Below, piece by piece: positions 3,398 to 48,373 of a stretch of DNA of 64,000 nt. The first letter of the stretch is position 1. The number at the start of each line of letters is the position of its first letter. The DNA is from Octopus sinensis (Eukaryota): NCBI RefSeq assembly GCF_006345805.1, contig NC_042999.1, forward strand, positions 46,252,001 to 46,316,000, in the 5' to 3' direction. Both the position numbers and the translations under genes were made by a program. The notes below the pieces were generated by a model. That model was not told the origin of the DNA, searched no databases, and saw nothing but the letters and a program-made list of their open reading frames with translations.

Positions 3398-3547
3398 GTT
3401 ATTCAGAAGAAACTACTGTTTGCATTGGGCAGTGCTGTTACAAAAGATTTGATTAACAACACAATCTATAAGAAACACTTCTTGGAGAATTTTGATTTTG
3501 CTACTCTTGAAAATGAGATGAATTGGCATCATAATGAACCAGAACAG
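3398..3547 (+). CDS. GH10 exon 1 ([14 protein letters not shown]...[21 protein letters not shown])
   Basis: ttttag acceptor, gtaggt donor, phase 0-0; matches GH10 F-x-x-A-T-x-E-N-x-M-K-W-x-x-x-E-P motif. Confidence 0.88.

Positions 3548-48373: not shown

What the first reader, a model, noticed from the sequence alone, without database searches (positions are those of the whole stretch)
3398..48373. GH10 glycoside hydrolase fused to five WSC domains in a probable octopus genome
Seen: 16 exons, many absent from the ORF track, splice in phase into one 968-aa frame with a GH10 barrel, a C-terminal beta-subdomain, linkers and five WSC domains with all 40 Cys intact. There is no C-terminal TM or GPI-like stretch. 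Known: GH10 enzymes are retaining endo-glycanases (mostly xylanases), found in some herbivorous molluscs. Animal WSC domains are known from Kremen, polycystin-1, xylosyltransferase and WSCD proteins; some fungal WSC domains bind beta-glucan or xylan. Inference: a secreted, multivalent glycan-binding hydrolase in a carnivore, possibly antifungal/immune or acting on prey or mucus glycans. I do not know this GH10+5xWSC architecture as a characterised animal protein.
Basis: partly seen in the sequence, partly recalled or inferred. Interest (0 to 1): 0.85.

Follow-up and report, generated by a model that had tools for sequence, protein, structure and literature searches.

The report
Octopus GH10 hydrolase with five WSC domains
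The window holds most of a real, conserved octopus gene for a secreted sugar-cutting enzyme (GH10) joined to five WSC sugar-binding modules; it is already predicted in public annotations but unstudied, and its sugar pocket has changed in a way not seen in any relative examined.

Summary
The window is Octopus sinensis chromosome CM016861.1 (0 mismatches). Seventeen GT-AG exons (3398-48373, + strand) splice into a 987-aa frame that matches RefSeq LOC115209445 exactly.

The frame has Pfam GH10 (134 bits) and five WSC domains with 8 Cys each. It has no TM segment. The gene is 5'-truncated: orthologues have a signal peptide and a CBM_4_9 exon plus a micro-exon, which fall in an O. sinensis assembly gap upstream of the window.

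GH10 and WSC are joined in gene models of O. sinensis, O. bimaculoides, O. vulgaris and Argonauta. The domains are under strong purifying selection.

The GH10 groups with other animal GH10s (cnidarian, amphioxus, gastropod, bivalve, annelid). Among its 150 best relatives only the octopod cluster carries WSC. Both catalytic Glu are kept, but three sugar-contact residues are changed (K->N, N->H next to the acid/base Glu, Q->E). The first two changes are octopod-only among 157 sequences.

Best reading: a secreted, glycan-tethered retaining hydrolase that probably no longer acts on plain xylan. It is a new variant of a known kind, already annotated but uncharacterised. Interest is moderate.

The parts
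3398..3547 (+). Exon (true exon 3): start of GH10 barrel, ENEMNW motif with K->N
   Evidence: GT-AG, phase 0/0. Matches the O. bimaculoides and Argonauta N-terminal models. The RefSeq model starts at an internal Met inside this exon.
6539..6594 (+). GH10 exon
   Evidence: 100% match to P0018
7605..7742 (+). GH10 exon (RGH...FW motif)
11038..11209 (+). GH10 exon with acid/base Glu (WDVNHE; Asn->His before the Glu)
14045..14155 (+). GH10 exon (GLGAEGH; Gln->Glu)
18503..18718 (+). GH10 exon with nucleophile Glu (LTEVD)
19771..19981 (+). Exon for the C-terminal helix and beta hairpin after the barrel; ends in phase 1
23460..23519 (+).
28747..29072 (+). WSC domain 1 (single exon)
31077..31299 (+). 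Ser/Thr/Asn-rich linker exon with 8 N-glycosylation sequons
32276..32447 (+). WSC domain 2, first half
32650..32783 (+). WSC domain 2, second half
34875..35147 (+). WSC domain 3. The alternative NAGNAG acceptor at 34872 adds one Glu (isoform X1 versus X2)
37700..37843 (+). Linker exon
38394..38565 (+). WSC domain 4, first half
41662..41783 (+). WSC domain 4, second half
48090..48373 (+). WSC domain 5 and stop codon (TAA at 48371-48373)

Best explanation
This is one octopod gene of 19 exons, of which 17 lie in the window. It encodes a secreted modular protein of about 1,226 aa: signal peptide, CBM_4_9-like module, GH10 (beta/alpha)8 barrel with a small C-terminal beta segment, then five WSC domains spaced by glycosylated linkers.

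The GH10 part descends from the old animal GH10 lineage. The WSC array was added in the octopod lineage, through exons that mostly start and end in phase 1.

Inferred mechanism: the WSC array and the CBM hold the protein on an insoluble or polymeric glycan. Fungal WSC domains bind chitin, beta-1,3-glucan or xylan. The GH10 barrel keeps both catalytic glutamates and cuts a beta-linked glycan by the retaining double-displacement mechanism.

Three residues that normally contact the sugar in the -1 subsite are replaced: Lys->Asn, Asn->His next to the acid/base Glu, and Gln->Glu. These changes are conserved between Octopus and Argonauta, so the substrate is probably no longer ordinary beta-1,4-xylan.

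Shown: gene structure, domains, retention of the catalytic Glu pair, the substitutions, purifying selection, and the restriction of GH10+WSC to octopods within the sets searched. Inferred: secretion, glycan tethering, catalytic competence and changed specificity.
For: Gene structure:
- A single solution of 17 GT-AG exons reproduces RefSeq XP_036356851.1 at 100%.
- GH10 and WSC are joined in models of O. sinensis, O. bimaculoides, O. vulgaris (GH10 to WSC1) and Argonauta (signal peptide, CBM, GH10, 3 WSC, with WSC4-5 just downstream).

Domains and fold:
- Pfam: GH10 134 bits, WSC x5 300 bits.
- The AlphaFold model has pLDDT 89.4 and matches XynA 7D88/7D89 with TM 0.81-0.84.
- The window's E124 and E226 align with the two Glu that are Ala in 7D89, the E182A/E280A mutant.

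Secretion:
- Orthologues carry a signal peptide and a CBM_4_9.
- No TM segment; 20 N-glycosylation sequons, 8 of them in one linker.

Selection:
- Against Argonauta, domains have pN 0.06-0.10 while pS is 0.65-0.82 (saturated). Linkers have pN about 0.3.

Active-site changes:
- Among 157 aligned GH10s, His before the acid/base Glu and Asn in place of the ENxxKW Lys occur only in the three octopod sequences. Glu in place of the GxQxH Gln occurs in 16.
- The Asn before the acid/base Glu normally hydrogen-bonds the substrate 2-hydroxyl (PMC4819176).

Architecture and origin:
- Only the octopod cluster among the 150 best GH10 relatives carries WSC.
- In a neighbour-joining tree the octopod sequences sit with animal GH10s that all keep K/N/Q.
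- Fungal WSC domains bind xylan, chitin and beta-1,3-glucan (PMC11611005).
Against: - No transcript or protein evidence was examined directly. The exon 7 to WSC junction rests on gene models, and two of those come from the same pipeline (Gnomon).
- Argonauta's annotation splits WSC4-5 into a separate partial gene, which shows that the models are imperfect.
- The N->H, K->N and Q->E changes could cripple catalysis rather than retune it.
- No binding or activity data exist for any animal WSC-GH fusion of this kind.
- The signal peptide and CBM are seen only in orthologues, because of an assembly gap in O. sinensis.
- The CBM_4_9 match is at the Pfam threshold (25.9-29 bits against a cut-off of 25.9).
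Confidence: 0.6

Rival explanations
1. An ordinary digestive endo-beta-1,4-xylanase, as the O. vulgaris record names it. The WSC domains simply act as extra xylan-binding modules. It would be retained to digest algal or plant xylan from prey guts or incidental intake.
For: It has clear GH10 membership with both catalytic Glu. The closest solved structure is a xylanase. Its relatives in herbivorous molluscs are treated as xylanases (PMC7560691). One fungal WSC domain binds xylan.
Against: Two -1 subsite residues that are K in 123 and N in 154 of 157 relatives, including every animal homologue looked up, are replaced in the octopods only. A third is also replaced. Octopods are carnivores, and this is their only GH10.
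Confidence: 0.2
2. A catalytically impaired, lectin-like pattern-recognition or matrix protein. The GH10 barrel, CBM and WSC array all serve only to bind microbial or structural glycans, by analogy with GH16-derived beta-glucan-binding proteins.
For: The -1 subsite is remodelled. Animal GH16+WSC proteins named 'beta-1,3-glucan-binding protein-like' exist in amphioxus and a bug. The layout, with five WSC domains and a CBM, is highly multivalent.
Against: Both catalytic Glu, the His of GxxxH and the Asp of TExD are strictly kept. The barrel is under strong purifying selection (pN about 0.10) between Octopus and Argonauta. Binding-only derivatives usually lose a catalytic residue.
Confidence: 0.15
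3. An annotation chimera: a GH10 gene and a separate downstream WSC-repeat gene that are never on one transcript.
For: No transcript data were seen here. An 8.8-kb stretch separates exon 7 from the WSC1 exon. Annotators have split this locus in different ways in O. bimaculoides, O. vulgaris and Argonauta.
Against: Exon 7 ends in phase 1 and the next two exons accept phase 1. Models of four species, from at least two annotation sources, join GH10 to WSC1. The WSC part has no start codon with a signal peptide of its own in these models. The same order of parts is conserved in Argonauta.
Confidence: 0.05

Closest known systems
XynA of Bacillus sp. KW1 (PDB 7D88/7D89) and the bacterial, plant and animal GH10 subfamily with an N-terminal CBM_4_9/CBM22 and a small C-terminal beta segment
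   Same: 36-38% identity over the structural alignment. E = 2e-76 by sequence and TM 0.81-0.84 by fold. The catalytic Glu pair is the same, and the C-terminal FRGYHGxY segment is shared.
   Different: XynA and all other relatives checked keep Lys/Asn/Gln in the -1 subsite and have no WSC domains.
Animal GH10 'endo-1,4-beta-xylanase-like' proteins (Nematostella, Branchiostoma, Littorina, Gigantopelta, Batillaria, Sinanodonta, Owenia)
   Same: They are the nearest clade in a neighbour-joining tree, at 31-39% identity over the GH10 domain. Several have an upstream CBM_4_9.
   Different: None of those retrieved has WSC domains, and all have the canonical ENxxKW, NE and GxQxH motifs.
WSC-containing enzymes: fungal copper-radical oxidases (PorAlcOx; TrLOx with five WSC) and animal GH16+WSC 'beta-1,3-glucan-binding protein-like' proteins
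   Same: A catalytic domain is fused to one or several 8-Cys WSC modules that tether it to cell-wall glycans. TrLOx also has five WSC. GH16+WSC proteins occur in amphioxus.
   Different: The catalytic partner differs (AA5 oxidase or GH16, not GH10). No GH10+WSC protein has been characterised. Binding by the octopus WSC domains is untested.
Kremen1 WSC domain (PDB 5FWW and others)
   Same: It is the best solved match to WSC1 (E = 9e-14), with the same Cys pattern.
   Different: Kremen has a single WSC in a Wnt/Dkk co-receptor with kringle and CUB domains and a TM segment. The octopus protein has neither those domains nor a TM.

Membership tests
Glycoside hydrolase family 10 | Sequence match to the family profile above the curated threshold | tested here: met
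   PF00331: 134.1 bits against a cut-off of 22.1, residues 8-281 of the in-window protein
Glycoside hydrolase family 10 | (beta/alpha)8 barrel fold matching solved GH10 structures | tested here: met
   Model pLDDT 89.4. Foldseek TM 0.81-0.84 to 7D88/7D89 and 0.71-0.74 to classical GH10 xylanases
Glycoside hydrolase family 10 | Two catalytic glutamates (acid/base and nucleophile) | tested here: met
   E124 (WDVNHE) and E226 (LTEVD) align with the E182 and E280 that were mutated in 7D89. Both columns are Glu in every one of the 157 aligned relatives that has a residue there
Glycoside hydrolase family 10 | Canonical -1 subsite contacts: Lys of ENxxKW, Asn before the acid/base Glu, Gln of GxQxH | tested here: not met
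   The window has Asn, His and Glu at these positions. The first two are unique to octopods among 157 sequences
Glycoside hydrolase family 10 | Endo-beta-1,4-xylanase activity | not testable with these tools
   Needs an enzyme assay
WSC domain (PF01822) | Profile match above threshold and eight conserved cysteines per domain | tested here: met
   Five stretches, 300 bits in total, each 66-78 bits alone. Each has 8 Cys
WSC domain (PF01822) | Carbohydrate binding | not testable with these tools
   Known only for some fungal WSC domains (PMC11611005)
CBM_4_9 (PF02018) N-terminal module | Profile match above threshold | tested here: inconclusive
   Not in the window. Orthologues score 25.9-29 bits against a cut-off of 25.9
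Secreted protein | N-terminal signal peptide and no membrane anchor | tested here: inconclusive
   A hydrophobic N-terminus (MYAFIILCCSASVFLHFIPTVKAG) is seen in the O. bimaculoides and O. vulgaris orthologues and judged by eye only. The O. sinensis exon lies in an assembly gap. There is no TM-like stretch in the 987 aa

The most novel reading that the evidence does not exclude
Octopods turned the ancestral animal xylanase into an enzyme with a specificity not yet described for GH10. They replaced the residues that read the C2 and C3 substituents of the -1 sugar and added five WSC modules. One candidate is a substrate carrying an amino, acetamido or axial group at C2, such as chitin- or chitosan-like material from prey or from their own cuticular linings. 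This would be a new GH10 activity in an animal.
Probability: 0.25. Interest if true: 0.8.

Novelty: new variant of a known kind. Interest (0 to 1): 0.5.

Why it matters
GH10 is one of the best-studied glycoside hydrolase families, and the Asn-Glu pair at the acid/base position is close to invariant. Here a lineage keeps the catalytic machinery under strong purifying selection, rewrites the residues that read the sugar, and gains a five-fold WSC array. That makes it a natural experiment in how specificity changes.

It is also the only GH10 gene counted in a carnivorous cephalopod. Its substrate would show whether octopods handle an unexpected glycan in digestion, in defence, or in turnover of their own chitinous linings.

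In practice, the public O. sinensis gene model lacks the signal peptide and the CBM because of an assembly gap, and the other octopod models are split.

Tried and rejected
- Direct splicing of exon 7 to the WSC1 exon, and of WSC1 to WSC2, was tried first. The phases forced linker exons, which were then found by tblastn with the RefSeq protein.
- I looked for the CBM and signal-peptide exons in window 1-3397 and in the 6.5 kb further upstream. They are absent. The cause is a 100-N gap, not gene loss: O. vulgaris has them at the matching place.
- Recent horizontal transfer from bacteria was considered, because the top hits by score are bacterial MAG proteins at about 40% identity. I rejected it as the leading view: the neighbour-joining tree places the octopods with animal GH10s, and a published analysis finds animal GH10 monophyletic (PMC6011409). 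The tree is a simple distance tree without support values.
- I searched for squid, cuttlefish or nautilus orthologues. None was found in one exhaustive and two word-indexed searches. The indexed searches are lossy: they did not even list P0018.
It was replaced by a local HMM built from the five WSC domains.
- Literature searches by accession number, by 'WSC domain-containing protein' plus octopus, and by octopus plus xylanase found nothing on this protein.
- dS against Argonauta is saturated, so only pN/pS contrasts are reported, not a dN/dS point value.

Full report
**What is in the sequence**

The window is AT-rich, full of microsatellites and retroelement ORFs, and has no long bacterial-type ORFs. 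Stop-free segments on the + strand contain recognisable GH10 motifs and five complete WSC domains. Pfam scores each WSC alone at 66-78 bits.

tblastn was run with GH10 homologues and then with the Octopus sinensis RefSeq protein P0018 (XP_036356851.1, LOC115209445 isoform X2), followed by an exhaustive search of GT/AG boundaries. Exactly one solution came out: 17 exons from 3398 to 48373, whose translation equals P0018 from its first Met to the stop. All donors are GT and all acceptors AG.

The in-window frame is 987 aa. A NAGNAG acceptor at 34872/34875 explains RefSeq isoforms X1 (948 aa) and X2 (947 aa).

The window is identical to GCA_006345805.1 chromosome CM016861.1. Locus L001 overlaps it over 58,373 bases with no mismatch.

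**The gene is longer than the window shows**

O. bimaculoides XP_014788451 and Argonauta hians GAB1606542 begin with a hydrophobic signal-like peptide and a CBM_4_9 module. They then run into the sequence of window exon 3398-3547.

In O. vulgaris, O. bimaculoides and Argonauta, residues 1-227 come from one 681-nt exon. A 12-aa micro-exon follows, and then the exon homologous to 3398. Neither upstream exon is in the window or in the 6.5 kb before it.

O. sinensis has a 100-N gap at L001:5043-5142. The sequence after that gap aligns to O. vulgaris downstream of the micro-exon. The RefSeq model therefore starts at an internal Met for technical reasons. The true gene has 19 exons and encodes about 1,226 aa.

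**One gene or two**

- Exon 7 ends in phase 1 and the next exons accept phase 1.
- GH10 is joined to WSC domains in the models of O. sinensis and O. bimaculoides (RefSeq).
- O. vulgaris CAI9719249 runs from GH10 through WSC1 and linker 2.
- Argonauta's model has signal peptide, CBM, GH10 and 3 WSC. WSC4-5 are annotated as a partial gene about 9 kb downstream, in the same order.

I could not look at transcripts, so this rests on annotation and conservation.

**Selection**

Codon comparison with Argonauta gives these values:

| Region | pN | pS |
|---|---|---|
| GH10 barrel | 0.10 | 0.77 |
| WSC1-3 | 0.06-0.07 | 0.65-0.82 |
| Two long linkers | 0.29-0.30 | 0.56-0.67 |

pS is saturated. The domains are strongly constrained and the linkers much less so.

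**Family membership and active site**

- Pfam GH10 scores 134 bits.
- The AlphaFold model of the 351-aa GH10 part has pLDDT 89.4. It matches XynA of Bacillus sp. KW1 (7D88/7D89) at TM 0.81-0.84 and classical GH10 xylanases at 0.71-0.74.
- 7D89 is the E182A/E280A mutant. In the sequence alignment those two positions are the window's E124 (WDVNHE) and E226 (LTEVD). The catalytic pair is therefore present.

I aligned 157 GH10 domains: the best 150 from an exhaustive HMMER search of 1.84 billion representatives, plus earlier hits.

| Motif position | Usual residue (count of 157) | Octopods |
|---|---|---|
| Lys of ENxxKW | K (123) | N, only in the octopods; one of the three lacks this column |
| Asn before the acid/base Glu | N (154) | H, only in the three octopod sequences |
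| Gln of GxQxH | Q (140), E (16) | E |

The Asn is the residue reported to hydrogen-bond the substrate 2-hydroxyl (PMC4819176). Assigning the Lys to the 3-hydroxyl contact is my recollection of the Cellulomonas fimi Cex and Streptomyces lividans structures, not a result obtained here. It is also my recollection that GH26 enzymes carry His at the position before the acid/base Glu. This is a lead only.

**Origin and distribution**

The best-scoring non-octopod relatives, at about 40% identity, are bacterial MAG proteins with CBM_4_9. A neighbour-joining tree nevertheless places the octopod sequences with Nematostella, Branchiostoma, gastropod, bivalve and annelid GH10s. This agrees with a published conclusion that animal GH10s are monophyletic (PMC6011409).

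All those animal sequences keep K/N/Q. None of the 150 best relatives other than the octopod cluster has a WSC domain. No decapodiform or nautilus orthologue was retrieved, but those searches cannot prove absence.

A molluscan GH survey already records one GH10 in O. bimaculoides and does not mention WSC (PMC7560691).

**WSC domains**

Each has eight Cys. The nearest solved relative is the Kremen1 WSC.

Fungal WSC domains tether enzymes to xylan, chitin and beta-1,3-glucan. One fungal oxidase has five WSC domains that bind chitin but not cellulose (PMC11611005). WSC fused to glycoside hydrolases occurs in other animals, for example GH16+WSC in amphioxus.

The octopus protein has no TM-like stretch. 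It carries 20 N-glycosylation sequons, eight of them in the 77-aa second linker. This fits an extracellular protein.

**Interpretation**

The best-supported reading is a secreted hydrolase anchored to glycan. Its catalytic pair is intact and its -1 subsite is remodelled, so its substrate is probably not plain xylan (confidence 0.6).

Rivals:
- an ordinary xylanase (0.2);
- a binding-only, lectin-like protein (0.15);
- an annotation chimera (0.05).

The architecture is a new combination of known modules. It is already present in public annotations as 'uncharacterized protein'. The unusual point is the octopod-specific rewriting of otherwise near-invariant sugar contacts.

**Limits**

There are no transcript, expression, binding or activity data. 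The tree is a distance tree without support values. The structure tool gives no coordinates, so the placement of the three substituted residues in the pocket rests on motif homology.

Noticed in passing
L001:5043-5142 (about 1.3-1.4 kb upstream of window base 1): A 100-N assembly gap in O. sinensis hides exon 1 (signal peptide plus CBM_4_9) and a 12-aa micro-exon of this gene. The RefSeq models XP_029633731 and XP_036356851 are therefore N-terminally truncated. In O. bimaculoides and O. vulgaris the same gene is split into two or three models.
   Followed up: yes
window 34872/34875: A tandem NAGNAG acceptor (cag|aag|G) at the WSC3 exon gives RefSeq isoforms that differ by one Glu.
   Followed up: yes
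window 23460-23519; L002: The 20-aa phase-1/1 linker exon is absent from the Argonauta model, which joins exon 7 directly to the WSC1 exon. It may be a cassette exon or specific to Octopus.
   Followed up: partly
window 49249-51700 and 51704-54148: A tandem duplication of about 2.45 kb at 99.3% identity lies just downstream of the gene. Each copy carries the same small ORFs and a Thr/Tyr/Asp-coding microsatellite.
   Followed up: partly
window 42532-46390, minus strand: A nearly intact non-LTR retrotransposon lies antisense in the intron before the last WSC exon. It has a 684-aa ORF with RVT_1 and zf-RVT, preceded by 382-aa and 176-aa ORFs without Pfam hits.
   Followed up: partly
window 1669-2541 (+) and 16798-17472 (-): A 290-aa ORF with a GIY-YIG nuclease domain (possibly Penelope-like) lies in the intron before exon 3398. 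A reverse-transcriptase fragment lies in the intron between the GH10 exons.
   Followed up: partly
window 9472-9645, 22347-22505, 35244-35507, 40341-40805, 59522-59788, 63267-63452 and others: Many copies, on both strands, of a short interspersed element whose ORF reads ...[19 protein letters not shown].... It is probably an abundant octopus SINE.
   Followed up: no
window 56001-60000: G+C rises to 0.46, against 0.32-0.41 elsewhere, with negative GC skew. This could be the start of the next gene or a different repeat class.
   Followed up: no
one search hit list: WSC arrays are fused to other catalytic domains in animals, for example GH16 'beta-1,3-glucan-binding protein-like' proteins in Branchiostoma and Nesidiocoris. 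Oyster has a WSC-repeat protein of 733 aa named 'putative fungistatic metabolite'.
   Followed up: no
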